This document shows positions 6,330 through 59,088 of a DNA stretch of 64,000 nt, in pieces. Origin of the DNA: Ranitomeya imitator (Eukaryota); NCBI RefSeq assembly GCF_032444005.1, contig NC_091282.1, positions 489,676,001 through 489,740,000 on the forward strand. The letters run 5' to 3'. Positions within the stretch are counted from its first letter, which is position 1. Every line of letters starts with the position of its first letter. The notes under the pieces are model-generated. The model was not told the origin of the DNA. It saw only the letters and a list, made by a program, of their open reading frames with translations, and ran no database searches. Both the position numbers and the translations under genes were made by a program.

Positions 6330-7440
6330 TCTATCCTGCTGTGTTTCCTTGTGTTCACCCCTTCTGCCCTTTGCTCCACATCCTGCGACTCTGCTGTTTG
6401 CTCTGCAATCTTCGGCTCTGCCCTTTGCTTCGCAATCTGCGGCTCTACCCTTTGCTCTGTGTCCTGTGGCTTTGCCCCTTGCTCCCCATCCTGTGGCTCT
6501 GCTCTTTGCTCCACATTCTGCAGCTGTCCTTTGCTCCGCATCCTGATGCTCTGCTCTTTGCCCTGAGTTCTGTGGCTCTGCTTTTGGCTGCACACCTTGC
6601 AGCACTTCTCTGCTCCGCCTCCTGCGGTTCTGTTCTGTTCCACCTCCTGCGGTTCTGCTCTGATCCGCCTCCTGTGGTTCTGCTTTGCTCTGCTCCTGCT
6701 CCACGCCCTGTTTGTCCTTTTCCTTCTAGTCTGTTCCTCCAGTCTGTACTGGTTCCTACCTGCTGCCTTATCCTACTCATACCTGCCTGTGTTTCCGTGT
6801 TTTTTTCTGAATCAGTTCCTGTCCCTCTAGTCTGAACTGGTTCCATTCTGTTCTCTATTCGGTACTGCCTGTGTTCCTGCCCTACCCGTTACCATCCTGA
6901 TTCCTTCAGTGTGTTCCGTACCCGCCTGCCTGCCTAGAGTGCCAGCTGTGCCTGCCTGCCTAGAGTGCCAGCTGTACCCACCCGCCTGCCTAGAATGCCA
7001 GCCGTGCCCGCCTTCCTGCCAACAGTGCCAGCCACGTTCGCCTGCCTGCCTAGTGTGCCAGCCGTGCCCGCCTTCCTGACAACAGTGCCAGCCACGTCCG
7101 CCTGCCTGCCCAGAGTGCCAGCCGTGCCCACCTGCCTGCCAAGAGTGCCCGCCGTGCCTGCCAAGAGTGCCGGCCATGCCCGCCAGAGTACCAGTCTTGC
7201 TCATCCATACTTGCTCGCACCTGTTAATAGTGTTTAGTCCCTCAATGGGATCAGCTGCTACAGCCAGACAACGCCCTGGAGTGGTACCTGGCAGCTACCT
7301 GCCACACAAGCCTGACCTCACTGTCAGAGGCTCCAGTGAACACCAAGGTAGCTGCTTAGTCACGCCCCTTCCAGGGTAGTCTGGTTTGTGGCACAGTGGG
7401 GCCACAATCCCCTTGCTCGCACCACCCGGTCAGGGCGTGA
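6330..7440. repeat. Two pyrimidine-rich minisatellite arrays (about 30-bp units) ending in an LTR-like terminus (...gggcgtga)
   Basis: Repeated ctgtggctctgctctttgctcc-like units at about 6330-6700 and gtgccagccgtgcccgcctgcctgcc-like units at about 6920-7190. The low-complexity ORFs here are artefacts of the repeats. Confidence 0.55.
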
Positions 7441-7554
7441 GTGTAACATTAGCGCTGAGATTCCCACATTAAAGATTGTTGATCGCACATGTGCCAGTTC
7501 ATGCATGTAGTTGTCAAATTATTGCAATTTTTGCCACTACTAAGTTTTCTTGCA

Positions 7555-7731
7555 TTATATGCTATGATGGGGCTGCATTATACTATATGAGGGCCACATA
7601 ATATTTTATGATGGGGCCTGCATTATACTATATGCGGGGGGCTACATTACATTCTATGAGGGGGACTACATTATATTCTATGAATGGGCTGCATTATATT
7701 CTATGAGGGGCTATGATATTATATGGGGACT
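7555..7731. repeat. Minisatellite (attatattctatgaggggct-like), interrupted by a SINE and resuming at about 8003
   Basis: About six degenerate units; the same motif resumes right after the SINE tail. Confidence 0.6.
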
Positions 7732-7846
7732 GCAGCACGGTGGCGCAGTGGTTAGCACAGCAGCCTTGCAGCGCTGGGGTCCTGGGTTCTAATCCCACCC
7801 AGGACAACATCTGCAAAGAGTTTGTATGTTCTCTCCGTGTTTGCGT

Positions 7847-7877
<31 letters not shown>

Positions 7878-8003
7878 ACATTCCAAAAGACATACTGATA
7901 GGAATTCTAGATTGTGAGCCCAATCGGGGACAGTGATGATAATGTGTGCAAACTGTAAAGCGCTGCGGAATATGTTAGCGCTATATAAAAATAAAGATTA
8001 TTA
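7732..8003 (+). mobile_element. tRNA-derived SINE (V-SINE-like core) with an L2-type 3' tail
   Basis: A-box-like ggtggcgcagtggttagc and B-box-like gggttctaatccc; core gtttgtatgttctctccgtgtttgcgtgggtttcctccggg..ctccggtttcctcccaca; tail ctagattgtgagccc...tgtaaagcgctgcggaatatgttagcgctatataaaaataaagattatt. Confidence 0.85.
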
Positions 8004-9859
8004 TATTCTATGAGGGAGGCTACCCTACCCCTGGTTTATTTAATTGAGACGTGTACTACCTTATATTATACCCTGATATTAGTGTGTTTATCCGCACAAT
8101 TGGTGGTCTTGTATTTATTTCTATGTAGCTACATAGTGTACCCCAAGAATGATTTTCTCTGGTGGGCCCAAGGTGCTCCAGTCCGACGCAGGCTATCAGT
8201 CACCTGTCACTAAATGAACAATCACTATTTTCATAGATAGATGTAACAATGTTGTTCAGGCACACTAATGATTTTTAAGTGAAAATCTTGCCATCTGATT
8301 TGTCCCTGAAACTCATTTTTTTCACAAACGATTTATAGTAGCAAATGGTGCCTGCGGAGACTGCCACAGTTTTTAAACAATCTAGTTAGATGCTGGAAGT
8401 TCGATTTCACACAGGACAGGATCCTATCTAGCAAACTGACAAGTTCACTTGCAGCACTATCAGGAGCGACTTGTCTGCACTATGACACCGAGCAAATGAT
8501 GACGGCAACATGATGTCTGCTTTTTATATTTCCAAATGTGACATAGGCAACCAAGACTTTGGAATCAACACACAAAGTTAAAGGAAAGAAAAGCGCCCCA
8601 TTCCTCTAACCCTCCCCTCATCAAACACGTAATCCAGACCCACCCACCCGCCCAATCATCATACAGCACCACTATCCAAGCTAAATTAATAAAGCATTAG
8701 TGGAAACGTGATGATTTACCGAAGTTTTCCTTACAAGTTTGCTCATCTCTAGTGATTGCAACATCCTGGGCACTGGAACGGCAGTTTGCAATTTTCACTC
8801 AGCAACATCAAATGCTGCTTGTTTCTGGAAAACACCCATAGAGTCAAAATCATCACTACACCTGTAGAAAAATTCTCATAGAGTACAATTTCCAAAATTG
8901 GGTAACTTGAGGGGGGATTCTGCTCTTCTAGCACTTAGGTGCTCTGTATATTAAGTCTGCAAACTATTCTAGCAAAATCTGCTCTCAAGGAGGCAACTAG
9001 CGCTCCGTCCCTCCCGAGTCTCGCCATGTGGCTAAACACTACTGTACAACCACATATGGAGTATTTCTACATTCAGCAGAAATTGTCAGACATATTTTAA
9101 ATGTGATGATACACCATATGTGGTTAAAAACTTCTTTTTGGGCACATGGCAGTGCTAGGAAAGAAAGTCTTGAATAGATTGTGAATATCATGTCGCATTT
9201 GGAGAGCCCCTGACATGTGAACACAGCAGAAACCCCTCACAAATGATGCAATTTTGGAAACTAGACCCCCTCAAGGACATATGACATTTTATTGCTACTT
9301 CCAATAGGTGGCACTAGAGTTCTAGTCCTCTTCATCTCTAAAGAGACAATTTGCATAGTGGTACAACTGTAATTTTTGTATTTGCCAGGCACACAAGGGT
9401 GAAACTAGTCCCCATAATTTATTGTGCAATTTCTCCTGCGGTGCTGCTCCACATGTCATCAGAAATTACTGTAAGGCCGGCATCACACTTGCGAGTTTTA
9501 CGGACGTATGAGCGCTGAAAATACGTCCGTAAAACTTGCAAAACAAACGGCACAATTATTCTCTATGCCTCTGCTCCTATCTGCCGTATTTTACTGATCC
9601 GTATTATACGGCTTTCTACGGCCGTAGAAAATCGCAGCATGCTGCGTTTGTCACCGTATTGCGCAAAAAAAATGCCAATGAAAGTCTATGGAAGCCCCAA
9701 AAATACGGATTATACACGGATCAGCAGTGTGACTTGCGAGAAATACGCAGCGCTGTTAGAGAGAAAAGCCGGCAATTCTGTGCGGTGTACAGTAAAATCA
9801 CACTGACAGCTTACATTAGAATAGGTAGAATAAATGTGTACACATGGAATAGGTATATA

Positions 9860-11511
9860 CAGTTAGGGCCAGAAATATTTGGACAGTGACACAATTTTCG
9901 CGAGTTGGGCTCTGCATGCCACCACATTGGATTTGAAATGAAACCTCTACAACAGAATTCAAGTGCAGATTGTAACGTTTAATTTGAAGGGTTGAACAAA
10001 AATATCTGATAGAAAATGTAGGAATTGTACACATTTCTTTACAAACACTCCACATTTTAGGAGGTCAAAAGTAATTGGACAAATAAACATAACCCAAACA
10101 AAATATTTTTATTTTCAATATTTTGTTGCAAATCCTTTGGAGGCAATCACTGCCTTAAGTCTGGAACCCATGGACATCACCAAACGCTGGGTTTCCTCCT
10201 TCTTAATGCTTTGCCAGGCCTTTACAGCCGCAGCCTTCAGGTCTTGCTTGTTTGTGGGTCTTTCCGTCTTAAGTCTGGATTTGAGCAAGTGAAATGCATG
10301 CTCAATTGGGTTTAGAGCTGGAGATTGACTTGGCCATTGCAGAATGTTCCACTTTTTGGCACTCATGAACTCCTGGGTAGCTTTGGCTGTATGCTTGGGG
10401 TCATTGTCCATCTGTACTATGAAGCGCCGTCCAATCAACTTTGCAGCATTTGGCTGAATCTGGGCTGAAAGTATATCCCGGTACACTTCAGAATTCATCC
10501 GGCTACTCTTGTCTGCTCTTATGTCATCAATAAACACAAGTGACCCAGTGCCATTGAAAGCCATGCATGCCCATGCCATCACGTTGCCTCCACCATGTTT
10601 TACAGAGGATGTGGTGTGCCTTGGATCATGTGCCGTTCCCTTTCTTCTCCAAACTTTTTTCTTCCCATCATTCTGGTACAGGTTGATCTTTGTCTCATCT
10701 GTCCATAGAATACTTTTCCAGAACTGAGATGGCTTCTTGAGGTGTTTTTCTGCAAATTTAACTCTGGCCTGTCTATTTTTGGTATTGATGAATGGTTTGC
10801 ATCTAGATGTGAACCCTTTGTATTTACTGTCATGGAGTCTTCTCTTTACTGTTGACTTAGAGACAGATACACCTACTTCACTGAGAGTGTTCTGGACTTC
10901 AGTTGATGTTGTGAACGGGTTCTTCTTCACCAAATTAAGTATGCGGCGATCATCCACCACTGTTGTCATCCGTGGACGCCCAGGCCTTTTTGAGTTCCCA
11001 AGCTCACCAGTCAATTCCTTTTTTCTCAGAATGTACCCAACTGTTGATTTTGCTACTCCAAGCATGTCTGCTATCTCTCTGATGGATTTTTTCTTTTTTT
11101 TCAGCCTCAGGATGTTCTGCTTCACCTCAATTGAGAGTTCCTTTGACCGCATGTTGTCTGCTCACAGCAACAGCTTCCAAATGCAAAACCACACACCTGG
11201 AATCCACCCCTGACCTTTTAACTACTTCATTGATTACAGGTTAACGAGGGAGACGCCTTCAGAGTTAATTGCAGCCCTTAGAGTCCATTGTCCAATTACT
11301 TTTGGTCCCTTGAAAAAGAGGACGCTATGCATTACAGAGCTATGATTCCTAAACCCTTTCTCCGATTTGGATGTGGAAACTATCATATTGCAGCTGGGAG
11401 TGTGCACTTTCAGCCCATATTATATATATAATTGTATTTCTGAACATGTTTTTGTAAACAGCTAAAATAACAAAACTTGTGTCACTGTCCAAATATTTCT
11501 GGCCCTAACTG
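9860..11511 (-). mobile_element. Tc1-family transposon, full length (1652 bp), TA target duplication
   Basis: TIR cagttagggccagaaatatttggacagtgacacaa at both ends, flanked by TA. Confidence 0.95.
10115..11152 (-). CDS. Tc1 transposase, intact, 345 aa, DD34E
   Basis: N-terminal HTH (IREIADMLGVAKSTV), GRPR, WTDETK, MDNDPKH, then 34 residues to the E of SPALNPIE. Confidence 0.95.
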   Translation of the reverse strand: MRSKELSIEVKQNILRLKKKKKSIREIADMLGVAKSTVGYILRKKELTGELGNSKRPGRPRMTTVVDDRRILNLVKKNPFTTSTEVQNTLSEVGVSVSKSTVKRRLHDSKYKGFTSRCKPFINTKNRQARVKFAEKHLKKPSQFWKSILWTDETKINLYQNDGKKKVWRRKGTAHDPRHTTSSVKHGGGNVMAWACMAFNGTGSLVFIDDIRADKSSRMNSEVYRDILSAQIQPNAAKLIGRRFIVQMDNDPKHTAKATQEFMSAKKWNILQWPSQSPALNPIEHAFHLLKSRLKTERPTNKQDLKAAAVKAWQSIKKEETQRLVMSMGSRLKAVIASKGFATKY

Positions 11512-12423
11512 TATATATATATATATATGTCAGTAAGACACATATATGTATATATATTATTACTTCATACAGCGCTAGATAGCTTTAAAGCCGGTAATTC
11601 AATTGCCGGCTTTTGCTATCTCCTTCCTAAACCCGACATGATATGAGACATGGTTTACATACAGTAAACCATCTCATATCCCCATTTTTTTGCATATTCC
11701 ACACTACTAATGTTAGTAGTGTGTATATGCAAAATTTGGCCGTTCTATTTACTAAATTAAAGGGTTAAATGGCAGAAAAAATTGGCGTGGGCTCCCGCGC
11801 AATTTTCTCCGCCAGAGTAGTAAAGCCAGTGACTGAGGGCAGATATTAATAGCCTGGAGAGGGTTCACGGTTATTGCCCCCCCCCCCCCCCTGGCTAAGA
11901 ACACCTGCCCCCAGCCACCCCAGAAAAGGCACATATGGAACATGCGCCTATTCTGGCACTTGGCCACTCTCTTCCCATTCCCGTGTAGCGGTGGGATATG
12001 GGGTAATGAAGGGTTAATGCCACCTTGCTACTGTAAGGTGACATTAAGCCAAATTAATAATGGAGAGGCGTCAATTATGACACCTATCCATTATTAATCC
12101 AATACTTGTAAAGGGTTAAAAAAACACAAACACATTAGTTAAAAATATTTTAATGAAATAAAAACAAAGGTTGTTGTAATATTTTATTCAACGCCCAATC
12201 CAGTCACTGAAGACCCTCGATCAGTAACAAAAAAACATAATAAACCAACAATATCCTTACCTTCCAAAGATCTGTAATGTCCAACGATGTACATCCATCT
12301 GAAGGGGTTAAAATATTTTGCAGCCACGAGCTTTGCTAATGCAACGTTGTTCGTGGCTGCAAAACCCCGGAGAATGAAGGTAAAGTAGGTCAATGACCTA
12401 TATTTACCTTCATTTGTGGTGAG

Positions 12424-12508: not shown

Positions 12509-13175
12509 TTGTCCTCATATGAACTCGAGCCTGGGAGCTTTCTAGGAAAGTTCCCACGATCTATGTGTCTACTGACAGTATATACAGGTCCTTCTCAAAA
12601 AATTAGCATATAGTGTTAAATTTCATTATTTACCATAATGTAATGATTACAATTAAACTTTCATATATTATAGATTCATTATCCACCAACTGAAATTTGT
12701 CAGGTCTTTTATTGTTTTAATACTGATGATTTTGGCATACAACTCCTGATAACCCAAAAAACCTGTCTCAATAAATTAGCATATCAAGAAAAGGTTCTCT
12801 AAACGACCTATTACCCTAATCTTCTGAATCAACTAATTAACTCTAAACACATGCAAAAGATACCTGAGGCTTAAGGTACCTTCACACTGAGCGACGCTGC
12901 AGCGATATAGGCAACGATACGACCAAAAGGCGATCGCTGGAGCGTCGCTGTTTAGATCGCTGTAGAGACGTCAAACACACCAACGTTCGAACGATGCCGG
13001 AGCGATACAGTGACGTAACAGCGACTCACGGATCGTTGTCGCTGGTTGCTTGCTTCACGTCAAACAGCAGTGGTTAACGATCCGATGAATTGGCAGCGTA
13101 GTCAGATAGGTGTCACCCAGGTGGGTGACACCCAGATAGGTGTCACCCAGGATGTGACGTCCCGGCGTCTCAGAA

Positions 13176-13370
13176 TATAAACCGCGACTCTACAGCGATT
13201 GATTCACATTGTTCGAGAGCTGCGTATGCCTGTTTTTCCCTGCATTTCTAGCGTCCTGTCCGGAACGATCCTTCTCCAGCTACGATCCTCTTCTACCGTG
13301 AACGTTCTGTTCGGAACGCCGTACTCCACTGCCGGCGTCTTCATCGGTTCTTTTATTGCTCATCAACGGT
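13176..13370 (+). promoter_or_regulatory. Predicted TATA promoter and non-coding first exon of the transposase gene
   Basis: TATAAA at 13176-13181; donor cg/gtatgt at 13369; strong polypyrimidine acceptor ctttctcag at 16259, six bases before the transposase ATG. Inferred, no transcript data. Confidence 0.5.
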
Positions 13371-14148
13371 ATGTTCAATTTTTTTTTTTTTTGTATAGTA
13401 ATGGCTGTGTAGTAATGCTAGACGCAATGCTTATCTAAAGTATATGGTATAGTAATGTATAAAACATATCTGGCAGCTATCTTGTGCATCTGGTAAGCGT
13501 ACACACAAGATGGAGGCACTTTCGGATGCAGTTTGCAAACTATTTGGCGCTGTGTAGCATTTTTTGCGCAAACTATATGGTAAGGCCAACCAACTCTTTT
13601 GTGTCTACCTTGGCTTAGCTGTCCCTGGCCTGCTCCGCAAGTAAATAAAAACAGCTCACAACTGGTAAACTAAATTTTTTTTTTTCACAAACTGACCTTA
13701 TTTTTTTTTGATCAAGAGACAATCACTGTCACGCTATCTATATTCATCAAGTACGGTGTCAGAAAAATGAATTCATGATAAACATATACAGGCTCCTGAA
13801 TTCACTATTTCTGACACCTGGCAGGTGAGCATAGATATGTACCGTGTGACAACCATTGTCCCCTCAATTTGTGTGATTATGGAGATGCATGTAATATTTT
13901 TGGCCCACCTCATATCTGTATACTACAGACACACCAAGCTGCAGTCTTTTCATTTTTAACTACTGGAGATATTATGTGGGCCAAAAAGTGTGTGTGGCGA
14001 CGTTTCTTGGCGCACGGTGTGTTGCCGGTGGCTATAGACACAATAAACCAAACATAATTGTGTCAAATCAAACTTTTTTTATGTTGTTAACTGAAAAATA
14101 ACAAGTAACAGAACAATATCCCAAACAATGAAAGAAAAAAAAAAAAAA

Positions 14149-15753
14149 TCAGAACCTCCCACGCCTCAAGAGGTGTCGCAGCGTGCGGCCATGTTGCTGT
14201 ACTTGTTGCAGCATGAGCGCTGCTGTCCGCTCCAGGCGGTCTTGCTTGGCCAGCAGCTCTCTCACGGTGTCCGGTTCTGTGATAGAAGAGGTTGGAGAAT
14301 GGACAGTGATAAAGCTGCAACGGTGGCATGTGTTTACATAACCAGCAATTTTACCGTACCGTCAAAAATAACGATTTTTGTAACGATATCTTTGATTTCT
14401 GTGAAGTTTCAACGATATTGTTAACGCAATCGTTCTGTGTGACAGCGACCCAGCGACCACACAGTGACTTACCAACGATCACGACCAGGTCGTATAGCTG
14501 GTAATGATCGTTAGTAATTCGTTTATTGTAAAATGGTACTTGTAACTACACACTCAATTTTCTACTGCCCCAGAGGGCTTTTTTTAGGTTCAATGTTTTA
14601 GGGTCCGTTTAGTCGTTGTCAAATGTGACATCCCACCGATAACCCCCTCCCACTTTCTCAATACTTACGGAAAAGGGACGCCTGTTGCTCATCCGCGGAG
14701 CTGCTGACCACCCATCCCCTGGCTCGGGCCACAGCTCCTGCTGCTGAAAGGAAGCAAATACATATCTGGTTAACAATTGAACTCACTGTGGTGAAGCGCT
14801 CGCTGGTTTTGTCACTTACGAATGCTTGTCGCTGGAGAGAATGACGCCGACCCGGGGGAGGAAGATGGGTGTTGAAAGGGCGGGGTTGTGGCCTGCGGTG
14901 GGGTTACTGCACCTGTAATGTACACAATATTTAACCTCCCTACTAATGGCCCGTATGGCGTCATTAAATTCTAAAAAAGGGTGGTTAACTTACGTGACGA
15001 CACTGGCTGTGGGCTTCCGCTGCTAGCCGCTGTACTGCTGGCTGCAGTGGGTGCTGTCCTCTGCCGGCGGCGTCTCTCTACACCCCAAAAAAAGACACGC
15101 AAGGTTTAGACACCAGAAGTACAGAGCTGTCGACTTAAATAAAAAATTAAGTAGGCGCCATCGCAATTGCCAGACATGAGGGGTAACTTACGTGACGGCC
15201 CTGGCTGTGGGCGTACGCTGCTGGCCGCTGTAGTCCTCTGCTGGCGTTGTCTCTCTATACACAAAAAATAAAGAAACACAATGTTTACACACCAAAGTAC
15301 AGAGCTTCCGACACCCCCACAAATAACAAACCTAGGCCAGTGGCATAAAGGAATAAAATTTAAATTTAACTCCCCAAATCGAGGTACATATATAGAAGGT
15401 GGGAAGCGCCACACGGCAGTGCGAGTGTCCCTATTCCCCCCTCCCGATACTGTGTGTCTCCCAATTACACTATACTGTTACTTGCCTTGCCTGGTCTCTG
15501 CCCGCAACGTTGCCAGATAAAGTGGCTGTTTGTACCGGAGGTCGGCCCACTTTTTGCGTAGCTGCAGCGCACTGCGCCGGATGCCGAACCTCCGCTCCAT
15601 CTTCTGGGCAATGTGGCGCAACACCTCATTCTTATGTAGATTTGGGTGTGCTGGGCGACTCTCCCGGCCCTCATAGTCCATGGCATCCATTTTTTTTACA
15701 AAAAAGCGGACCTCTGTCTGCCCCAAAGGAGGACATCGCTGTCTCGCCGCCAT
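14149..15753 (-). CDS. Predicted 6-exon Myb/SANT-like DNA-binding protein (236 aa): exons 15753-15486, 15254-15192, 15077-14994, 14912-14820, 14743-14669, 14276-14149
   Basis: Exon 1 reads MAARQRCPPLGQTEVRFFVKKM...KNEVLRHIAQKMERRFGIRRSALQLRKKWADLRYKQ (Myb/SANT-like, MSANTD-type). All five introns are phase 1 (donors GCAAGT, then GTAAGT four times; AG acceptors). The joined frame is open for 711 nt and ends in a coiled-coil-like PDTVRELLAKQDRLERTAALMLQQVQQHGRTLRHLLRRGRF*. Confidence 0.75.
14357..14540. mobile_element. Degenerate MITE of the same Harbinger family inside the last intron of the Myb/SANT gene
   Basis: Ends gtaccgtcaaaaataacg and cgtttattgtaaaatggtact resemble the aggtaccgtcacac TIR. 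Confidence 0.4.
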
Positions 15754-16065
15754 TTTAGCAAGAGAGACGCTGTATGGCACCACCCAGCCACGCCCAGAGG
15801 AGGTCCTTGATTCTACCGTTCTGACGCGCAATTCGCAACGCTATAGCGTCTCCATTTATGCACACCGTCGCGGGTGTGACGTCGGCTCCAGAAGTCACTA
15901 TTTGGCGTTCCCGTTATAAATCAGCAGCGCTCATCGTCCTGTTTGTTTCAGTGGATGGTACATTTAATGGAGGGTATCTATGGGGTATGGCTGTTGTGTT
16001 AACGTTGCTTACAATTAGCCATGTATATCTCTGTGTATGTATATATGTATGTGTGTGTATGTATG

Positions 16066-16067
16066 TG

Positions 16068-16104
<37 letters not shown>

Positions 16105-16114
16105 ATATATATAT
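16066..16114. repeat. (TA)n microsatellite
   Basis: Run of ta repeats, directly visible. Confidence 0.95.
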
Positions 16115-16265
16115 AGTACCTTACATCCTATGTTAACATTTTTGTCAAATGGTGCAGCATCGGTGACGCAACGGAGAATGCATTACAGTATTGGATGTCT
16201 TGTGTAAGTTTTGAAAATGATATGTAGTAATTTTTTTTTTTTCTTTTTTCCTTTCTCAGGTTGCC

Positions 16266-17525
16266 ATGTCTCATTCGGATGTACCTGTGATTGTTGCGGC
16301 CGCGTTATTGGTAGAAGCTCACAACCAGCTGGAGGTTCAAGCGCGAAACAATCGTGTAAAGCGTCAGCGCCGCATGTGGACCAAACAGTGGCTGCAGAAG
16401 AGGAATCAATTGTCCCATATGGGCCTTATAAGGGAACTGCAGGATAACAACCCGCATGATTTTCGTAACTACCTGAGAATGTCGGAGGACTCATTTAATG
16501 TCCTACTTGCAGCTGTAGAACCTTATATCAGGCGGCAAAATACACAGATGAGAGCAGCTGTCCCTGTGGATGAGAGGCTGGCTGTCACGCTGCGTTTCCT
16601 GGCGACTGGCAGGTCTATGCAAGACTTGCATTACAGCGCAGCTATATCCCGATCCCTACTCAGCGTCATCATCCCAGAGACATGCAAAGCTATTGTCTCA
16701 GTTTTACACCGCAGTTACATGCCTTTCCCACAGACCCCGGATGACTGGAAAGAGATTTCTAGGGGATTTGAGGAGCAATGGCAGTTCCCGAATTGCGGTG
16801 GGGCCTTGGATGGCAAACATGTACGCATCACCCAACCACCACACTCTGGCTCCTTTTATTATAACTATAAGGGATATTTCAGCATAATTCTCATGGCCCT
16901 CGTAAATGCTAACTATGATTTCATAAGTGTGTCTGTTGGGATTAACGGGAGAGTATCCGATGGAGGAGTTTTGGAGCACACAGATTTTGGGGAACGCTTG
17001 AAAAATAATAAACTTGCCTTGCCGCCCAACAGTGACACAACAGAAAACATGAACTTTGTCTTTGTCGGAGATGAGGCTTTCCCACTGCATCCGAACCTTT
17101 TGAAGCCCTTCTCCCAGAAGACTCTGACACCGGAACGACGAATCTTTAATTACAGACTTTCAAGAGCTAGACGCGTTGTTGAAAATGCATTCGGAATTAT
17201 GGCAAACCGATTTCGGGTTTTCCACACAGCACTAAACATGAAACTAACGTCTATTGACTCTGTGGTGCTTGCTTGTTGTGTCCTCCACAACTTTCTACGT
17301 CGCCGTGATGCCACTGCATACAGCCCTACACAGTATGTAGACTCTGTGGACCAGGGTAACGGAGATGTAACCCAGGGCGAATGGCGTCTAGACGCGCACA
17401 GGGTTTGTGGTTTGGAAAGTCTGGGTTCTGGAAGGTACTGTGATGATGCAACTAATAGCAGGGACAAATACTCTGACTTTTTCAATGGGCCAGGGGCTGT
17501 CCCATGGCAGTATCAACAGCTGTAA
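16266..17525 (+). CDS. Harbinger (HARBI1-like, DDE_Tnp_4) transposase, intact, 419 aa
   Basis: FRNYLRMSEDSF, ERLAVTLRFLATG, catalytic GALDGKH / VGDEAFPL / RRVVENAFG, LACCVLHNFL. Confidence 0.95.
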   Translation: MSHSDVPVIVAAALLVEAHNQLEVQARNNRVKRQRRMWTKQWLQKRNQLSHMGLIRELQDNNPHDFRNYLRMSEDSFNVLLAAVEPYIRRQNTQMRAAVPVDERLAVTLRFLATGRSMQDLHYSAAISRSLLSVIIPETCKAIVSVLHRSYMPFPQTPDDWKEISRGFEEQWQFPNCGGALDGKHVRITQPPHSGSFYYNYKGYFSIILMALVNANYDFISVSVGINGRVSDGGVLEHTDFGERLKNNKLALPPNSDTTENMNFVFVGDEAFPLHPNLLKPFSQKTLTPERRIFNYRLSRARRVVENAFGIMANRFRVFHTALNMKLTSIDSVVLACCVLHNFLRRRDATAYSPTQYVDSVDQGNGDVTQGEWRLDAHRVCGLESLGSGRYCDDATNSRDKYSDFFNGPGAVPWQYQQL

Positions 17526-17858
17526 CGTAACTGTTGGCATAACTTATACCATGTATTATGGATGATATTGTTGGGGGGTTCAAGTGCTCTTGTGTAAAAG
17601 TGCTCATTTTTAACAATTTTTGGATGACCCATGATACTCCTTTTTCTGTAATAAATGTGAACATAACGATATATCTATTTGTTATTTCTTATTATTTTAC
17701 ATACATACCAATACATACCAATCAACATATATATCTATGAACATACTCTACTTCTGTATCAATCATATGAAACCTGTGAGTCTTCAGCATCCTATGCACT
17801 AGTGATTTCCTGATGTGTGTGTGTATATATATATTAGTAGATGTTCACCATATTCTAA

Positions 17859-18575
17859 AGGTACCTTCACACTCATCGACTCTGCAGCGATACCGACAAT
17901 GATGTCGATCGCTGTTTGGTCGCTGGAGAGCTGTCACACAGACAGCTCTCCAGCGAGCACCGATCCAGAAGTCCACGGGTAACCAGGGTAAACATCGGGT
18001 TACTAAGTGCAGGGCCGCGATTATTAACCCGATGTTTACCCTGGTTACCGTTGTAAATGTTAAAAAAAAATTACAATACATACTTACATTCACGCTGTAT
18101 AGTCATGTCCCTCGCCTTCAGCTTCCAGCACTGACTCAGCGCCGGGCGTAAAGTACAACGGTGATGTCAACGCTGTGCTTTACTACCGGACGGCGCTCAC
18201 CAGTCAGTGCGGGAAGCCGAAGGCGAGGGACTTGACCATACAGCGGGAATGTATGTACTGTTTGTTTTTTAAACATTGACAACGGTAACCATGGTAAACA
18301 TCACGTTACTAAGAGTGGCCCTGCACTTATTAACCCAATGTTTCCCTTGTTTCTTGTGACGACATCGCTGAATCGGCGTTACACATGCTGTGTGTAACGC
18401 CGATTCAGCGATGTCAGCGGGAGATTCAGCAACCACAAAAAGTGCTGTACTTTCCCCAGCGACCAATGATCTCCCAGCATACATTACCGTCACACAACAA
18501 TTTAGTTAACGATATCGTTGCTACGTCACAAAAAGCAACGATATCGTTAACAATATAGTTATGTGTGACGGTAAT
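17859..18575. mobile_element. Harbinger-family MITE copy between the convergent 3' ends of the transposase and MADF genes
   Basis: Starts taa|aggtaccttcacac; internal blocks (ggtaaccagggtaaacatcgggttactaag, catcgctgaatcggcg) shared with the MITE at 43279; right end degenerate. Confidence 0.7.
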
Positions 18576-18879
18576 GTATTGGGTATTCTAGCATTTGCAT
18601 GTCCCCGTCGCATATTGCCCAGCAACGTAGTATATTGACCAGCGGCGTCATTTATTGCCAAGCCAAAGAGACACGTAGTACATACACAAATTTAAGAAAC
18701 CAAAAATTTTATTATTTGTATTAAAAATTTTATTATTTGTTATTACAATACTTTTTTAATGTTGATGAGGCATAGGGGATTAATGACCGGGTGCCAGGAG
18801 GATGCCTGCAGGGGAGAAGGCATAGGGGATTACTTGTGGAGCATCTAAAACACAAGTCTCATTTATTTAAACTACAACA

Positions 18880-20180
18880 CTACAAATTTTGGTAGTAAGT
18901 GTCCTTCTCACTGTAGTGGTGCGTGGCTATAGGAGGTCCTTGTGATAAGTCACCAAAAGAAGGGGGTGCAGGTGGTGTCCGGAACTGAGAATTATGTGGC
19001 CCAGGTCTGCGGACAGGAGTGCTGTGCATGGGCTCCTGTTGGTGTCCCCAATAAAAATGGGCACTGGGCTGACGGACGTCAATGCTCAATGTTGATGTGT
19101 CGCATAGTTTTCCTGCGGCTGCCGCGTTCATAACGTCAAACATTATTCTCTCCGCGTGAGATCTTTGGGTATCATCCAGTCTGTTTAAACGTTCCTCAAC
19201 CAAGGATGCGAATGGGGAGAGTTTGGTTGTGACGTGCTTGGACAAGATGCTGTTGGCCACTGCCAGGAGATCCACAGGTGTGGCTGCTGTTGATTTTCTT
19301 TTTCTAGATGGGCGCAGTGGACATGTCTGCTCCTCGACAGACGGGCTACTGGAGGACTGAGGGGACTGGACATTGTTCGCTTCCGTTGTTTCCCGCTGTT
19401 GCAGAGGCACCTGCAATTACATGAAAAAGAAAAATTTAAAATAAATAACATACAAACGACTCTGCCACACAGCCCTAGAGAGCCCACACCTCCCCAAACA
19501 CCTCTATGCCCATTGGAACCTATGAGGAACAGTTACCTGGGTTAAAAAACAAAGGGGTTAAAGAGCTGTGCAGAACTACATTGGCCGGCAATACTGTACG
19601 AATGTGCGGAAGACACAATATGTTAATTACGGACACAGGAAGTGGCAGCTGTTATCATCAGGGGGATTAAACATGAACAACGTGACTCACTATTACTGGA
19701 AGCCATGCAGTCTCATAAACATACAAGACACACGGCATGCTACAAGAAGGGAAGCTTGGGGCTACTTACATGGTCGTCAGGAGACTCAGGCAGGATATCT
19801 TCGGGCGATGGCTCACAAAGGCTAGTCACAGTCTGGCACGGGCGAGGGATTTCTTGGTCTCTAGTGAATGCCATCAGGTCGTAATACCACAGCCTGGGCA
19901 CATAGACTTCCTCAGTTCCGGCCCCAGACTTCTTAGAATTTTCCACTTTGTTGACCTCTTTTTTGAAAACTGTGCGGAGAGCCTGGATCTTTTTCCTCAC
20001 AATGTTTTCATCCACGGTCTCTGTGGGATGATACTCCCTGTAGACGGCCACCAGCTTCTCATACGCTTCTCTCTTCATGTAACGGTTGCTATAATCCTTA
20101 GATTTTATCTTCCACAAACAGGGCAGGGAGCGGTACATCTCTATGAGTGCCCGAACACAGTCCTGCTCATTTGTAGACAT
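18880..20180 (-). CDS. Predicted 2-exon MADF-domain DNA-binding protein (313 aa): exons 20180-19770 and 19410-18880
   Basis: MADF signature LIEMYRSLPCLW...YSNR...AYEKL...VRKKIQALRTVFKKE...SGAG...YVPRLWYYDLMAF; phase-0 donor cat/gtaagt joins phase-0 acceptor tgcag/gtg; C-terminal helical segment FASLVEERLNRLDDTQRSHAERIMFDVM. Confidence 0.85.
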
Positions 20181-20642
20181 CTTTAAAAAATAAAAAAATA
20201 AAAGTTAAGAAACAGCAAAAAATAAAAGTTTGATGAGCCGTATGCCGTTCCTATTGTTATCAGTCATTTTTTGTATGGGATGGTCCGTGGGACTATTTCC
20301 ACCATTTAGGGGATGGGATGGGGGCCGTTTGTGTGTTTCCTCATAGCCACCATTTGGGGATGGGATGAGGGCTATTTTTATCCATTTTGAGCGTTGAAAA
20401 ATTTGTAAATTCTATTGGTTGCTATTTTGTCAATGGCCAAATTCATGTTGGTGAAACACACCATACTACAAAATCGTTTGCATTACCACTTAAAAGGGAA
20501 ATACTACGACGCTAAAGCGTCTTTGGTTATAAACGTGAAAGCTCTAAAAAAATCACTGCTGAGATGTAGTATACATCTATTTCTATACACATAAATTAGT
20601 ATTGCTGCATGGCAAATGAATACAGCACAAGGATATACTCAC

Positions 20643-20832
20643 CGTAGATGTACTAATTGAGAACGCTGCAGAGTTGAAGATCTACAAACAGGTCGCTCAA
20701 AAGTTACAGCCAAGACGCCCACGAGTTGATGGAGAAGGAACACGATGGATTTCGAACCAAGACGCACACGAGATGCTCGTGGATGGCAGAGTACGCACAA
20801 GTGATTGAAAAGTTGTAAAGTCGCGGTTTATA
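20643..20832 (-). promoter_or_regulatory. Predicted TATA promoter and non-coding first exon of the MADF gene
   Basis: TATAAA at 20832-20827; donor cg/gtgagt at 20642; acceptor ttttttaaag immediately before the ATG at 20180. Confidence 0.55.
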
Positions 20833-20899
20833 TTTCGGAACGCAGGTACACATGACCCCGATGTGACCTATCAGCGTTCTCAGTGAGACGTAACAACAA

Positions 20900-21320
20900 A
20901 GCCATTTGAAATATATAACGTTATGGCGTCACCTTTTGTAATGTAATAATGTGATTTAAAGGGGTCTTCTTTTGTAATAGTGATGCATTGTAAATACGCC
21001 CTTACGTAAAGTTCACACCTACCTCCTAGGCTGTCGTGACAGTTGGCGTCACCTTTTGTAATGTAATGTAAAGGGGTGCCTTTTTCAATGTAATAATGTG
21101 ATGTAGGCATCACCTTTTGTCTTTGGAATGCATTTGGGAGTATGGTGATAATTACATTACTATAATAATGTTCACACCATCTCCCAGGCCATTATGACAG
21201 ATGGCGTCTCCTTTTGTAATTTGTAATATATTGGGATCTTCGAAATAATTGCGTATCTATCTACGAGCGACATTGCTAAATTTAAAGGCGTCTCCTTTTG
21301 TAATGCATAACGCCTACCTG
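20900..21320. repeat. Dispersed subterminal repeats ggcgtc(a/t)ccttttgtaat, about 5 copies
   Basis: Copies near 20925, 21046, 21107, 21203 and 21287. Confidence 0.75.
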
Positions 21321-21611
21321 GCCACAACAAGACGCTGCGACGGCCCCTTTCATCGTTGCTGACGTCGTTGCTTTTCATGTCAAACACAACGATTCAGGCT
21401 GATCTAACGACCAAATAAAGTTCTGAACTTTCGGCAACGACTAGCGATGTCACAGCGGGATCCGGATCGCTGCTGCGTGTCAAACACAACGATATCGTTA
21501 TCCAGGACGCTGCAACGTCATAGATCGTTGTCGTTCTCGTTGCAATATTGCTCAGTGTGAAGGCACCTTTATATAAACTCCCTGCCTGGTTCATTACTCA
21601 AAACCCCCATC

Positions 21612-22616
21612 ATGGGTAAGACTAGCGACCTGACAGATGTCAAGAAGGCCATCATTGACACCCTCAAGCAAGAGGGTAAGACCCAGAAAGAAATTTCTCA
21701 ACAAATAGGCTGTTCCCAGAGTGCTGTATCAAGGCACCTCAATGGTAAGTCTGTTGGAAGGAAACAATATGGCAGAAAACGCTGTACAATGAGAAGAGGA
21801 GACCGGACCCTGAGGAAGATTGTGGAGAAGGACCGATTCCAGACCTTGGGGAACCTGAGGAAGCAGTGGACTGAGTCTGGTGTGGAAACATCCAGAGCCA
21901 CCGTGCACAGGCGTGTGCAGGAAATGGGCTACAGGTGCCGCATTCCCCAGGTAAAGCCACTTTTGAACCATAAACAGCGGCAGAGGCGCCTGACCTGGGC
22001 TACAGAGAAGCAGCACTGGACTGTTGCTAAGTGGTCCCAAGTACTTTTTTCTGATGAAAGCAAATTTTGCATGTCATTCGGAAATCAAGGTGCCATAGTC
22101 TGGAGGAAGACTGGGGAGAAGGAAATGCCAAAATGCCTGAAGTCCAGTGTCAAGTACCTACAGTCAGTGATGGTGTGGGGTGCCATGTCAGCTGCTGGTG
22201 TTGGTCCACTGTGTTTCATCAAGGGCAGGGTCAATGCAGCTAGCTATCAGGAGATTTTGGAGCACTTCATGCTTCCATCGGCTGAAATGCTTTATGGAGA
22301 TGAAGATTTCATTTTTCAGCACGACCTGGCACCTGCTCACAGTGCCAAAACCACTGGTAAATGGTTTACTGACCATGGTATTACTGTGCTCAATTGGCCT
22401 GCCAACTCTCCTGACCTGAACCCCATAGAGAATCTGTGGGATATTGTGAAGAGAAAGTTGAGAGACGCAAGACCCAACACTCTGGATGAGCTTAAGGCCG
22501 CTATTGAAGCATCCTGGGCCTCCATAACATCTCAGCAGTGTCACAGGCTGATTGCCTCCATGCCACGCCGCATTGAAGCAGTCATTTCTGCCAAAGGATT
22601 CCCGACCAAGTATTGA
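21612..22616 (+). CDS. Tc1 transposase, intact, 334 aa, DD34E
   Basis: HTH TQKEISQQIGCSQSAVS, FSDESKF, QHDLAPAH, then 34 residues to the E of NSPDLNPIE. Confidence 0.95.
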   Translation: MGKTSDLTDVKKAIIDTLKQEGKTQKEISQQIGCSQSAVSRHLNGKSVGRKQYGRKRCTMRRGDRTLRKIVEKDRFQTLGNLRKQWTESGVETSRATVHRRVQEMGYRCRIPQVKPLLNHKQRQRRLTWATEKQHWTVAKWSQVLFSDESKFCMSFGNQGAIVWRKTGEKEMPKCLKSSVKYLQSVMVWGAMSAAGVGPLCFIKGRVNAASYQEILEHFMLPSAEMLYGDEDFIFQHDLAPAHSAKTTGKWFTDHGITVLNWPANSPDLNPIENLWDIVKRKLRDARPNTLDELKAAIEASWASITSQQCHRLIASMPRRIEAVISAKGFPTKY

Positions 22617-23758
22617 GTGCATAACTGAACATTATTATTTGATGGTTTTTTTGTTTGTTATTAAAAAACACTTTTATTTGATTGGATGGGTGAAATATGC
22701 TAATTTATTGAGACAGGTTTTTTGGGTTATCAGGAGTTGTATGCCAAAATCATCAGTATTAAAACAATAAAAGACCTGACAAATTTCAGTTGGTGGATAA
22801 TGAATCTATAATATATGAAAGTTTAATTGTAATCATTACATTATGGTAAATAATGAAATTTAACACTATATGCTAATTTTTTGAGAAGGACCTGTATATA
22901 TATTTTTTTGACACATGGATCCCTTCTATAGCCGTATGTTGGTTTTGCAAGCCTGCGAGAAAAACACGCAGTACGGATGCCATACGGATTACATACGGAG
23001 GATGCCATGCGAAAAAAACGCTGACACACCCTGCCTACGGAGGAGCTACGGACCACTATTTTCGGGACTTTTCAGCGTATTACGGCCGTAATATACGGGC
23101 CGTATTGTCTTACGCTGTGTGTGACGCCGGCCTTAGGCCATATGTTAAGGCTGAGAAGGAAAAAGCTCTATTTGGCTTTTGGAGCACAGATTTTACAAGA
23201 ATAGTTTGCGGGTGACATTTGCAGAGACCTGAAGATGCCAAAGCAGCAGAAAAACTCCAAAAGTGATCACATTATAGAAATTGCACCTCTCACTTAATTC
23301 ATCTACAGCTGCAGTGACTTTTATAACATCCACGCTGTACTTTTTTTCTGAAGAATTGCAAATATGCCAGTTTAGTGCCCATACATTGTGCCCCCATACA
23401 GTGTAGAGCCCTCGTATATTGTAGCACCCTGTACATTGTGCCCAGCTTGTGCTTTTGCCGATACGCACCCCGTAAATTGTTACATGCTCTCTCCTGACAA
23501 CAATAATGCCAAACATGTGTCCGCTTACTGTAGCTTAGGCACAGTTGGGCATTTGGATTTTGGAGTGCAGAATTCACTGGATTTTATTTGAGGGGGGGGA
23601 ACCATGTTGCTTTTCCTTTATTCTACCAGTAACGTGTGAGCCCGATATAGTTCCAGTGACAGACGATGGACCTGACTGGGGCTGGTTTTGTGTGGAATAA
23701 ATTAGGGATTTTATTGATAACTTTTTGGGGTACATAATATTTTTTGAGAATAAGTTTA

Positions 23759-43144: not shown

Positions 43145-44170
43145 TGTACCTCTCCCACTCCCTCTTCAACCACTTACAATCTACCTTCAGATTTACCTCT
43201 CTGGACCAAATATCACCTCCTTACGAACCAGAATCCCACAATGATATCTTTCTTCTCTGCTAGATTTCTAAAACTTAAAGGTTCCGTCACACTAGACAAT
43301 ATCGCTAGCGATCCGTGACGTTGCAGCGTCCTGGCTAGCGATATCGTCCAGTGTGACAGGCAGCAGCGATCAGGCCCCTGCTGTGATATCGCTGGTCGGG
43401 GAAGAAAGTCCAGAACTTTGTTTCGTCGCTGGATCTCCCGCTGACATCGCTGAATCGGCGTGTGTGACGCCGATTCAGCGATGTCTTCGCTGGTAACCAG
43501 GGTAAACATCAGGTTACTAAGCGCAGGGCCGCGCTTAATAACCCGATGTTTACCCTGGTTACCATCATTAAAGTAAAAAAAACAACCACTACATACTTAC
43601 CTACCGCTGTCTGTCCTCGGCGCTCTGCTTCTCTGCTCTGGCTGTGAGCACAGCGGCCGGAAAGCAGAGCAGTGACATCACCGCTCTGCTTTCCGGCTGC
43701 CCGGCGCTCACAGCCAGAGCAGAGAAGCACAGCGCCAAGGACAGACAGCGGTAGGTAAGTATGTAGTGGTTGTTTTTTTTACTTTAACGATGGTAACCAG
43801 GGCAAACATCGGGTTACTAAGCGCGGCCCTGCGCTTAGTAACCCAATGTTTACCCTGGTTACCGGGGACCTCGGGATCGTTGGTCGCTGGAGAGCTGTCT
43901 GTGTGACAGCTCTCCAGCGACCAAACAGCGACGCTGCAGCGATCCGGATCGTTGTCGGTATCGCTGCAGCGTCGCTTAGTGTGACGGTACCTTAACATGG
44001 TTAAAATAAAATTAATCATCTTTCCCCATCTCACTCAACCACTTCCAACAGATTTATCCATCAAAGTCAATGGCTGCTCACTCTCCCAAGTTAACCCTTG
44101 ACTGTGATCTCCCATTTAAACCACATATCCAAGCCCTTTCCACTTCATGCCGACTCCAACTCAAAAATAT
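43145..44170 (+). mobile_element. Old L2 fragments (43145-43270 and 44005-44170) flanking a MITE
   Basis: 44100-44170 (tttaaaccacatatccaagccctttccacttcatgccgactccaactcaaaaatat) resembles the L2 copy at 47310-47370. Confidence 0.5.
43279..43992. mobile_element. Harbinger MITE (714 bp), TAA target duplication, ends homologous to the autonomous element at 12874-21568
   Basis: taa|aggttccgtcacac ... gtgtgacggtacct|taa; terminal 100-150 bp align by eye to both ends of the full-length element. Confidence 0.9.
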
Positions 44171-58190: not shown

Positions 58191-58199
58191 AAGGGGGAA
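58191..58199 (+). other. Polypurine tract aagggggaa
   Basis: Immediately 5' of LTR 2. Confidence 0.8.
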
Positions 58200-59088
58200 T
58201 GTGGCACCCCTAGGGGTATTTGCCACAAAAATAGTTACTGACAGTAAATGCAAATACTAAAATAGCAAGACTGCACTACCACCTCCGGCCAGAAGGGGGA
58301 GCTCCAGAGACTCCCCTTGATCCATTCTGGTCTGAGAGAAGAACTGGCAGTTGGGCTAAGGAGCTGAAAGTGAGAGGTCATACAGTTGAATCTCTAACAG
58401 CCCTGTGACTGTTACCAGGCCTAAATCACCGGCCTGAGGAGAAGAGGGATAGAGAAAAAGGACATTGTGAGAACCGGGTAGCATTAATCACTACCCAGAA
58501 CAGGCGCAAAGACGGATACCGGATCCGTGGCTGTATTCATTACATATAATACAGCAACCGGAAAAACGTGAGGTGATATCAGCTTCACTAGGGTCGGACG
58601 CAGCAACAGACACAGAGTTCAGCGGTACTCCTGGAGGGGGTAAGCCGATAAAAGGACTTGGGTTGCCCGTCGAACCAGGACCCGGAGGGGACAGATTGGG
58701 CCGGCAGCCAGTTCACATACAGCAGCAGGGCCACACAGATATTGCGTACAATAAGAGGCGAAGACCCCGGCAGGGTCAAAGTAACTCAGAGTTCCCATAC
58801 AGACTCCGGTGACAGGACTGGTTGTAAATCCTTTTTTGTTAAAGTAAACTGGTTAAACGTTTCAGTGCCTCAGTCTTTCATTTGGACAATAGCCATCTAT
58901 CCAGGATTGGGATCATCACCGCTGGGAGAACCTGCTGCTGATCAAGTAAGTGCCTGTTCCCTCACAATACCCTTTACACTGTGCATTGCCTGAGGCCACA
59001 GCACCGGGTCAAGCCACCCGTGACACCCCCCTCAACAGACAGACCCCATTGGTCCGGTGCTGGGTACCCCGGTCTCTTGGGCGTCACA
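58200..59088 (+). repeat. Gypsy LTR 2 (shared between the two tandem units)
   Basis: No difference from LTR 1 seen by eye; followed by a second PBS and leader. Confidence 0.95.

What the first reader, a model, noticed from the sequence alone, without database searches (positions are those of the whole stretch)
12874..21568. Apparently autonomous three-gene Harbinger transposon with two different DNA-binding proteins
Canonical PIF/Harbinger elements encode a DDE transposase plus one Myb/SANT/MADF protein (established). This 8.7-kb copy has matching TIRs, an exact TTA TSD, an intact 419-aa transposase, an intact spliced MADF gene and an additional intact spliced Myb/SANT-like gene unrelated in sequence to the MADF one. 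The second DNA-binding protein could be a regulator, anti-silencing factor or targeting factor (inference). Whether this layout is already described for amphibian Harbingers cannot be judged without a search.
Basis: partly seen in the sequence, partly recalled or inferred. Interest (0 to 1): 0.85.

Follow-up and report, generated by a model that had tools for sequence, protein, structure and literature searches.

The report
Three-gene Harbinger transposon in frogs
A young, probably still mobile Harbinger "jumping gene" in the mimic poison frog carries a real, spliced third gene for a second DNA-binding-type protein besides its transposase and MADF partner. The same three genes sit together in Harbinger copies of two other frogs, so this is a conserved variant of a transposon normally described as having two genes.

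Summary
Window 12874-21568 (Ranitomeya imitator) is a complete PIF/Harbinger element with these features:
- 19-bp termini with one mismatch, and an exact TTA duplication on each side.
- An intact 419-aa DDE_Tnp_4 transposase.
- A 313-aa MADF gene whose intron is confirmed in RNA.
- A 6-exon, 236-aa gene (14149-15753, minus strand) inside the presumed 5'UTR intron of the transposase.

The third gene is not a nested insert:
- No inverted repeats flank it.
- Its DNA word depth matches that of the other two genes.
- A second species holds it almost unchanged.
- NCBI models reproduce its exons.
- RNA contigs show its last intron spliced.

Its homologues lie beside a Harbinger transposase and a MADF gene in Anomaloglossus. 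In Xenopus laevis they lie inside a TAA-flanked 5.8-kb element in which all three genes are homologous to the window's.

Its N-terminal domain folds like the NAIF1/MSANTD/GT-1 trihelix class, which is the usual vertebrate Harbinger partner type. It falls just below Pfam thresholds.

Its function is inferred only. I propose a second element-encoded DNA-binding factor that acts on one of two repeated subterminal motif classes.

I found no paper describing this layout; Repbase and Dfam could not be searched. The scan reached the same conclusion before on other DNA of this genome (s1-274988).

The parts
12871..12873 (.). Left target-site duplication, TTA
   Evidence: matches 21569-21571
12874..12918 (+). 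Left terminal inverted repeat (AGGTACCTTCACACTGAGC...)
   Evidence: (I7)
12970..13066 (+). Two GTCAAACA subterminal motifs (12970, 13059). Candidate binding sites, class A.
   Evidence: 4 of the 7 window matches lie within 190 bp of the two ends
13103..13151 (.). 15-bp tandem array, 3.3 copies, with core GGTGTCACC. Motif class B, just upstream of the left TATA.
13159..13368 (+). Left promoter (TATA at 13174-13181) and non-coding leader exon of the transposase, ending at a GT donor (13369). Mirror image of the right end.
   Evidence: I6; 71% identity to the reverse complement of 20560-20880, donors in register. Transcription start and splicing not shown; inferred.
13369..16259 (+). Presumed 5'UTR intron of the transposase (GT..polypyrimidine-CAG), which holds the third gene in antisense
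   Evidence: sequence; not confirmed by RNA
14149..15753 (-). Third gene: Myb/SANT(trihelix)-like plus C-terminal helix protein, 236 aa. Exons 15753-15486, 15254-15192, 15077-14994, 14912-14820, 14743-14669, 14276-14149. Intron 1 is GC-AG.
   Evidence: in frame; joint 14276/14669 in RNA runs X4 and X13 only; NCBI P0183 100% identical over exons 2-6; R. variabilis P0180 full length
14352..14467 (.). MITE fragment inside intron 5 of the third gene
   Evidence: I2, I13; word depth about 120,000
16021..16126 (.). (TG)n/(TA)n microsatellite between the third gene's promoter and the transposase
16266..17525 (+). Transposase CDS, 419 aa, single coding exon
17859..18575 (+). Nested MITE or MITEs with the same terminal motif. 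Part of the family's master copy, because the transposase-to-MADF spacing is constant across copies.
   Evidence: D11; depth 10^5
18880..19410 (-). MADF gene, last coding exon (basic patch; BESS-like helix by eye only)
19770..20180 (-). MADF gene, first coding exon (MADF domain)
   Evidence: (joint 19410/19770 in RNA)
20643..20849 (-). Right promoter (TATA at 20835-20827) and non-coding leader exon of the MADF gene. The 5'UTR intron is 20642-20181.
   Evidence: (I6); splicing of this intron not tested
20925..21295 (.). Dispersed GGCGTC(A/T)CCTTTTGTAAT repeats (4 exact cores, 6 loose copies). Motif class B.
21378..21493 (+). Two TGTCAAACACAACGAT motifs, 100 bp apart. Motif class A.
   Evidence: D7
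21524..21568 (-). Right terminal inverted repeat
21569..21571 (.). Right target-site duplication, TTA

Best explanation
This is a full-length, recently active PIF/Harbinger DNA transposon of an anuran lineage whose standard gene set is three genes, not two.

Shown:
- TIRs and a TTA duplication.
- A DDE transposase with its catalytic triad.
- A spliced MADF gene.
- A spliced third gene whose product has an N-terminal trihelix Myb/SANT-like domain of the NAIF1/MSANTD/GT-1 type, a low-complexity linker, and a conserved C-terminal helix.
- The third gene is carried by most copies of the family.
- Its homologues are linked to a homologous transposase and MADF in Anomaloglossus and Xenopus.

Inferred:
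- The two ends carry mirror-image promoters and leader exons that drive the transposase and MADF inwards.
- The third gene has its own promoter and lies antisense in the transposase's 5'UTR intron.

Proposed mechanism (inference, about 35-40% likely). MADF is the cognate 'gene 2', since it is the partner of the related insect transposases. It would bring the transposase to the subterminal sites and into the nucleus. The third protein would be a second sequence-specific factor of the element. It would bind the other of the two repeated subterminal motif classes (GTCAAACA near the tips; GGYGTCWCC arrays just upstream of both TATA boxes), and so either help assemble the ends or tune the element's own transcription. 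The confidence figure refers to the identity claim: an integral, conserved third gene of a three-gene Harbinger.
For: Anatomy.

Copy number and youth:
- The identical 419-aa transposase is encoded at 11 or more places, with MADF at constant spacing.
- The host Tc1-like copy has 205-bp TIRs that are 100% identical.

The third gene is integral:
- Word depth of near-identical DNA contigs is 347-418 for the third gene, about 550 for the transposase and 392-540 for MADF. Organism B holds all three.
- The gene is called over the same 1605-bp span on two chromosomes.
- No flanking inverted repeats.

Expression:
- RNA-only joints at 14276/14669 and 19410/19770.
- No RNA cover of the MADF intron, which argues against DNA contamination.

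Conservation:
- Anomaloglossus locus: transposase 418 aa (+), third gene 247 aa (+), MADF 304 aa (-).
- R. imitator paralogues lie next to MADF genes.
- X. laevis L001:6427-12188 has TAA duplications and 23-bp TIRs. Its transposase is 57-61% identical, MADF 51%, and the third gene 32% with E = 3e-15.
- The C-terminal helix is conserved across families.

Fold: pLDDT 87.7. Best matches are GT-1, Zeste, MYPOP, FSBP, TSNARE1, NAIF1 and MSANTD3/4.

Motifs.
Against: - No function is shown for the third protein.
- Pfam hits are below the gathering scores (26.0 vs 27; 20.2 vs 21.7).
- RNA contigs run unspliced through introns 1-4 (14842-16021). Only intron 5 is confirmed directly by RNA; introns 1-4 rest on NCBI models.
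- The gene's position and orientation differ among the three frogs, which also fits a mobile passenger.
- Most NCBI copies have no model for it.
- The motif classes were picked after seeing the sequence.
- No DNA of other R. imitator copies could be fetched, so the ends of other copies were not compared.
- No dN/dS was computed.
Confidence: 0.8

Rival explanations
1. The third gene is a passenger: a host or foreign Myb/SANT gene captured by an ancestral frog Harbinger and carried along, transcribed but with no role in transposition.
For: Its place and orientation differ between R. imitator, Anomaloglossus and Xenopus. Family members also occur fused to a KRAB box (P0125) and as solitary longer genes in Bufo and Hyperolius. 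The insect relatives of the transposase manage with MADF alone (PMC9710019).
Against: It has been retained with open frames in lineages whose transposases are only 57-70% identical. Both the domain and the C-terminal helix are conserved while the linker drifts. Most young copies carry it. All 8-10 listed between-copy variants in its span fall outside its exons; this is a partial list (table 3).
Confidence: 0.15
2. The Myb/SANT segment is a separate element nested in this copy, or is specific to a minority of copies.
For: It lies in an intron-like 2.9-kb stretch that the right-hand mirror side lacks. MITE debris is present in it.
Against: No TIR or TSD lies around it. Its word depth equals that of the other genes, and it is present in a second species. 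The same gene span is annotated on two chromosomes. The trio recurs in two other genera.
Confidence: 0.03
3. The 8.7-kb unit is a chance pairing of two MITE ends around unrelated genes, not one transposon.
For: The same terminal 14-mer heads very abundant MITEs, one of them nested here.
Against: The TTA duplications match exactly. The mirrored promoter, leader and donor lie inside both ends. Both flanks are the two halves of one Tc1-like element. Gene spacing is constant across 6 or more copies. The homologous Xenopus element has its own TIRs and TSD around the same three genes.
Confidence: 0.02

Closest known systems
Insect PIF/Harbinger elements with a MADF 'gene 2' (Drosophila PIF-like elements; PMC9710019)
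   Same: DDE_Tnp_4 transposase that is 46-54% identical to beetle, moth, aphid and fly proteins. A MADF-domain partner gene. TWA target duplication.
   Different: Those elements have two genes. This one adds a third, unrelated Myb/SANT-like gene, mirrored promoters with leader exons, and introns.
Zebrafish Harbinger3_DR and its domesticated pair HARBI1/NAIF1 (Sinzelle et al. 2008, as cited in PMC9710019 and PMC9392472)
   Same: The third protein's domain has the fold of NAIF1, MSANTD3/4 and TSNARE1 (TM 0.61-0.68), which are the vertebrate Harbinger Myb-like partner class. A DNA-binding domain followed by a C-terminal interaction-type region.
   Different: No sequence-level membership: only sub-threshold Pfam hits, and homologues are found only in frogs. 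In Harbinger3_DR this type of protein is the only partner. Here it coexists with MADF.
Xenopus laevis element at L001:6427-12188 (chromosome record CM030341.1)
   Same: All three genes are homologous. TAA duplication. The TIR starts with AGGT. CGAT-rich subterminal repeats.
   Different: Gene order is transposase(+), MADF(-), third gene(+). Transposase and MADF exons are interleaved. The transposase frame is broken near 8525. It is 5.8 kb instead of 8.7 kb.
ISL2EU and Spy branches of the Harbinger-like superfamily (PMC9179366)
   Same: DDE transposase of the same superfamily; these are examples showing that the accessory gene set can vary.
   Different: ISL2EU pairs the transposase with a YqaJ exonuclease. 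Spy has one ORF and no duplication. Neither has two DNA-binding accessory genes.

Membership tests
PIF/Harbinger DNA transposon | DDE transposase of the DDE_Tnp_4/Plant_tran type with an intact catalytic triad | tested here: met
   (116 bits against a cutoff of 24.8). D182, D269 and E306 are invariant in 11 homologues.
PIF/Harbinger DNA transposon | 3-bp TWA target-site duplication flanking terminal inverted repeats | tested here: met
   TTA on both sides; 19-bp termini with 1 mismatch
PIF/Harbinger DNA transposon | Second gene for a Myb/SANT/MADF protein | tested here: met
   MADF 56.8 bits against a cutoff of 22; spliced in RNA
PIF/Harbinger DNA transposon | Multiple dispersed copies; evidence of mobility | tested here: met
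   11 or more places with the identical transposase. Inserted in a young Tc1-like copy. Actual transposition is not testable here.
PIF/Harbinger DNA transposon | Two-gene organisation (textbook definition) | tested here: not met
   Three genes lie inside the TIRs, here and in Xenopus L001. This is the point of difference.
Myb/SANT-like trihelix domain (Pfam Myb_DNA-bind_4 / Myb_DNA-bind_5; NAIF1/MSANTD/GT-1 class) | Score at or above Pfam's gathering threshold | tested here: not met
   26.0 vs 27 and 20.2 vs 21.7. 15 and 14 of 23 homologues give sub-threshold hits.
Myb/SANT-like trihelix domain (Pfam Myb_DNA-bind_4 / Myb_DNA-bind_5; NAIF1/MSANTD/GT-1 class) | Three-helix fold superposable on solved or predicted members | tested here: met
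   Model pLDDT 87.7. GT-1 probability 0.98, TM 0.58-0.60; Zeste TM 0.58-0.69. MYPOP, FSBP, NAIF1 and MSANTD3/4 TM 0.61-0.68. Foldseek E-values are weak (0.1-1) for this small domain.
Myb/SANT-like trihelix domain (Pfam Myb_DNA-bind_4 / Myb_DNA-bind_5; NAIF1/MSANTD/GT-1 class) | Sequence-specific DNA binding | not testable with these tools
   Needs EMSA, DAP-seq or similar
MADF-BESS proteins | BESS motif C-terminal to MADF | tested here: not met
   No BESS hit on the last exon at E <= 0.1 (protein 3). There is only a helix that looks BESS-like by eye and is conserved with Xenopus.

The most novel reading that the evidence does not exclude
Frog Harbingers of this lineage are true three-component (in some families four-component) transposons. 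The NAIF1-like third protein would be required for, or would set the rate of, transposition by binding its own class of subterminal sites. The two ancient 'flavours' of Harbinger partner, MADF and trihelix Myb-like, would then work together in one element.
Probability: 0.35. Interest if true: 0.65.

Novelty: new variant of a known kind. Interest (0 to 1): 0.55.

Why it matters
Harbinger elements are the textbook two-protein DNA transposons. They are also the source of host gene pairs such as HARBI1/NAIF1, ALP1/ALP2 and HDP1/HDP2.

A lineage that has kept two different DNA-binding partners from pipid to dendrobatid frogs, and that appears to be still active, offers three things:
- A natural system to ask what each partner does: targeting, nuclear import, end synapsis or self-regulation.
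- A candidate active vertebrate transposon with related high-copy MITEs.
- An explanation for many 'uncharacterized protein' models in frog annotations.

It also warns annotators that TE-internal multi-exon genes are being called as host genes.

Tried and rejected
DNA of other dendrobatid copies:
- It could not be fetched with the look-up of encoding contigs ('file too large'). Only gene tables were usable, so ends of other copies and dN/dS could not be done.
- Two X. laevis isoforms were not on record.
- The Hyperolius and Phyllobates loci were uninformative: long gene spans with no neighbours.

Sequence and structure searches:
- A PDB sequence search with the domain profile gave nothing meaningful.
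- Rfam found nothing in the element.
- No uninterrupted copy of the host Tc1-like element exists in the window to serve as an empty site.
- The search for homologous proteins could not reach the 219-aa NCBI product of the window's family because of its length window; P0138 was used instead.

Considered and rejected:
- A nested-element origin of the third gene.
- Chance MITE pairing.
- DNA contamination as the source of the RNA signal, because the MADF intron has zero RNA depth.

Literature searches for a three-ORF Harbinger returned only unrelated papers.
Full report
**Origin.** The transposase ORF is 100% identical to an NCBI protein of Ranitomeya imitator (assembly GCA_032444005.1). The nearest relatives come from other dendrobatoid frogs, then other anurans, then insects at about 46-54% identity.

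**Observation: ends and transposase.**
- The element runs from 12874 to 21568.
- The left end reads TTA|AGGTACCTTCACACTGAGC and the right end reads GCTCAGTGTGAAGGCACCT|TTA.
- The first 19 bp differ at one position, and the arms stay about 78% complementary for 46 bp.
- The terminal 14-mer occurs four times in the window against 0.04 expected. Two occurrences are the element's ends and two are ends of MITEs.
- The 419-aa ORF at 16266-17525 is a DDE_Tnp_4/Plant_tran transposase (E = 1.4e-33). D182, D269 and E306 are invariant across 11 homologues.

**Observation: MADF gene.**
- On the minus strand, 20180-19770 plus 19410-18880 encode a 313-aa MADF protein (MADF E = 2.9e-15).
- The joint 19410/19770 is present in contigs of two RNA runs and in neither DNA run.
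- NCBI calls a 313-aa MADF gene at the same offset from the transposase in at least five of the six places shown (313 aa; 299 aa in the sixth).

**The third gene.**
- On the minus strand I modelled six exons: 15753-15486, 15254-15192, 15077-14994, 14912-14820, 14743-14669 and 14276-14149. The first intron is GC-AG and the others are GT-AG.
- They join into 711 nt with no stop, giving 236 aa.
- The NCBI product P0183 (222 aa) is 100% identical to exons 2-6 of this model but starts inside intron 1.
- The R. variabilis protein P0180 (227 aa) is full length and supports the exon-1 junction.
- NCBI also has a 219-aa product over exactly the same 1605-bp span next to a transposase and MADF.
- The joint 14276/14669 (intron 5) is seen in both RNA runs and in neither DNA run.
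- The same RNA runs contain contigs that run unspliced from 14842 to 16021. Introns 1-4 are therefore supported by the annotations, not directly by my read laying.
- DNA contamination is unlikely to explain the RNA signal, because the MADF intron and the 18740-18939 stretch have essentially zero RNA depth.

**Is the third gene part of the element?**
- No inverted repeats or duplications bracket it.
- In the DNA run of the same species, near-identical contigs have word depth 347-418 over the third gene, about 550 over the transposase and 392-540 over MADF. Most copies therefore carry it.
- A DNA run of a second, coded species holds near-identical pieces of all three genes at matching depth.
- The gene is annotated with the same span on two different chromosome records, so at least one of these is not the window.
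- The variants between copies that the tool listed in 14140-15940 all fall in introns or upstream sequence. This is suggestive only, because the list is partial and some variants lie in a MITE fragment (table 3).

**Relatives.**
- An exhaustive HMMER search with exon 1 found 49 representative clusters. Every named one is an anuran: dendrobatoids, Hyperolius, Xenopus, Rana/Lithobates/Aquarana, Nanorana, Eleutherodactylus, Engystomops and Bufo.
- In Anomaloglossus baeobatrachus, the homologue P0123 lies between a 418-aa DDE_Tnp_4 gene and a 304-aa MADF gene.
- Two more distant R. imitator paralogues lie directly beside MADF genes.
- A 70%-identity transposase family has, in one copy, two upstream antisense genes without Pfam hits. 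This fits the scan's notes of four-gene variants.
- For Xenopus laevis the DNA was available (L001). A 5.76-kb element at 6427-12188 has TAA on both sides and TIRs reading AGGTGGCCATACA(T/C)GGGCA.
- That element contains a transposase 57-61% identical to the window's, a MADF gene 51% identical, and the third-gene homologue P0174 (32% identical, E = 3e-15).
- The trio is therefore old in frogs, or has travelled together. The transposase is the most conserved of the three and the third gene the least.

**What the third protein is.**
- Homologues share an N-terminal domain of about 88 aa, a low-complexity P/S/A/R-rich linker and a conserved C-terminal helix of about 40 aa.
- Pfam gives only sub-threshold matches to Myb_DNA-bind_4 and Myb_DNA-bind_5. 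These occur in 15 and 14 of 23 members.
- An AlphaFold model from the 23-sequence alignment is confident (pLDDT 87.7).
- Its best solved matches are the Arabidopsis GT-1 trihelix domain and the Drosophila Zeste DNA-binding domain.
- Its best Swiss-Prot matches are MYPOP, FSBP, TSNARE1, NAIF1 and MSANTD3/4 (TM 0.61-0.68).
- NAIF1, TSNARE1 and the MSANTD genes are Harbinger Myb-like derivatives (PMC9392472).
- BLASTP finds no similarity to the element's MADF protein.
- The element thus carries both partner types: the MADF type of the related insect elements and the trihelix type of vertebrate Harbingers.

**Layout.**
- The two ends are mirror images beyond the TIRs.
- A TATA-containing block (13159-13207 and 20801-20849) is followed on each side by a non-coding leader of about 190 nt and a GT donor in register (71% identity).
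- The right leader would splice to the MADF start codon (intron 20642-20181).
- The left leader would splice to a polypyrimidine-CAG acceptor six bases before the transposase ATG (intron 13369-16259). That intron contains the third gene in antisense, with its own TATA-like box near 15860.
- These two 5'UTR introns are inferred from sequence only.

**Candidate binding sites.** Two repeated motif classes sit in both ends.
- GTCAAACA occurs twice within 190 bp of each terminus (the longer TGTCAAACACAACGAT repeat at the right end is D7).
- GGYGTCWCC occurs three times just upstream of the left TATA and four times upstream of the right one. The window holds 11 against 1.15 expected.
- I chose these patterns after seeing the sequence, so they are leads. 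Two motif classes and two DNA-binding proteins suggest a division of labour.

**Youth and activity.**
- The identical transposase is encoded at 11 or more places.
- This copy sits inside a Tc1-like element whose 205-bp TIRs are 100% identical (12583-12785 and 22695-22897) and whose 334-aa transposase is open.
- MITEs with the same terminal motif reach word depths of 10^5, against a few hundred for the autonomous element.

**Comparison with the literature.**
- Recent papers state that two genes are the defining layout of PIF/Harbinger (PMC9710019, PMC13668399, PMC9179366).
- ISL2EU pairs the transposase with an exonuclease, and Spy has one ORF (PMC9179366).
- Searches for a three-ORF Harbinger found none.
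- Repbase and Dfam could not be searched. Xenopus Harbinger consensus sequences may already contain the third ORF.
- The scan itself reached the same conclusion on another piece of this genome (s1-274988) and noted four-gene variants (s1-294663, s1-288129). I tested the Xenopus claim independently.

**Verdict.** The element is a new variant of a known kind, of moderate interest. The function of the third protein is open. My preferred mechanism is a second element-encoded DNA-binding factor acting at its own subterminal sites, and it is an inference.

Noticed in passing
window:12583-12785 and 22695-22897; ORF 21612-22616 (+): The Harbinger is inserted in a Tc1/mariner-like element with 205-bp, 100% identical IR/DR-type TIRs and an open 334-aa DDE_3 transposase. 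It is itself a very young copy.
   Followed up: partly
L001:6672-9506 (Xenopus laevis): Transposase and MADF exons are interleaved on opposite strands. The MADF last exon (7924-7460) lies between the transposase N-part (6672-7193) and DDE part (8061-8525+). The transposase frame breaks near 8525.
   Followed up: no
window:17859-18575, 14352-14467, 43400-43992: MITEs sharing the AGGTACC(T/G)TCACAC terminus have word depths of 10^5 in DNA and also high depth in RNA runs. They are probably the non-autonomous partners of this Harbinger group.
   Followed up: partly
P0125 (Phyllobates terribilis, 346 aa): An annotated protein joins a KRAB box to the third-gene Myb/SANT-like domain. It is either a chimeric gene model or a domesticated fusion.
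   Followed up: no
P0166/P0200 (Bufo bufo, B. gargarizans, 656 aa): A long protein with this domain is more than 90% identical between two toad species. It may be a host gene derived from the third gene.
   Followed up: no
window:15254-15192 and 15077-14994: Exons 2 and 3 of the third gene, with their upstream intron ends, are an internal duplication. The R. variabilis homologue has only one of them.
   Followed up: partly
R. imitator family with 70%-identical transposase (P0006): One copy has two upstream antisense genes (399 and 161 aa, no Pfam hit) besides MADF. This possibly matches the four-gene variants noted by the scan.
   Followed up: no
window:62648-63743: Satellite of about 19 copies of a 57-58-bp unit.
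   Followed up: no
window:51200-51965, 58198-58963, 60486-60785: Stretches of 300 bp or more repeated at 100% identity, 7.0 and 1.8 kb apart. They may be a recent duplication, a very young repeat or an assembly artefact.
   Followed up: no
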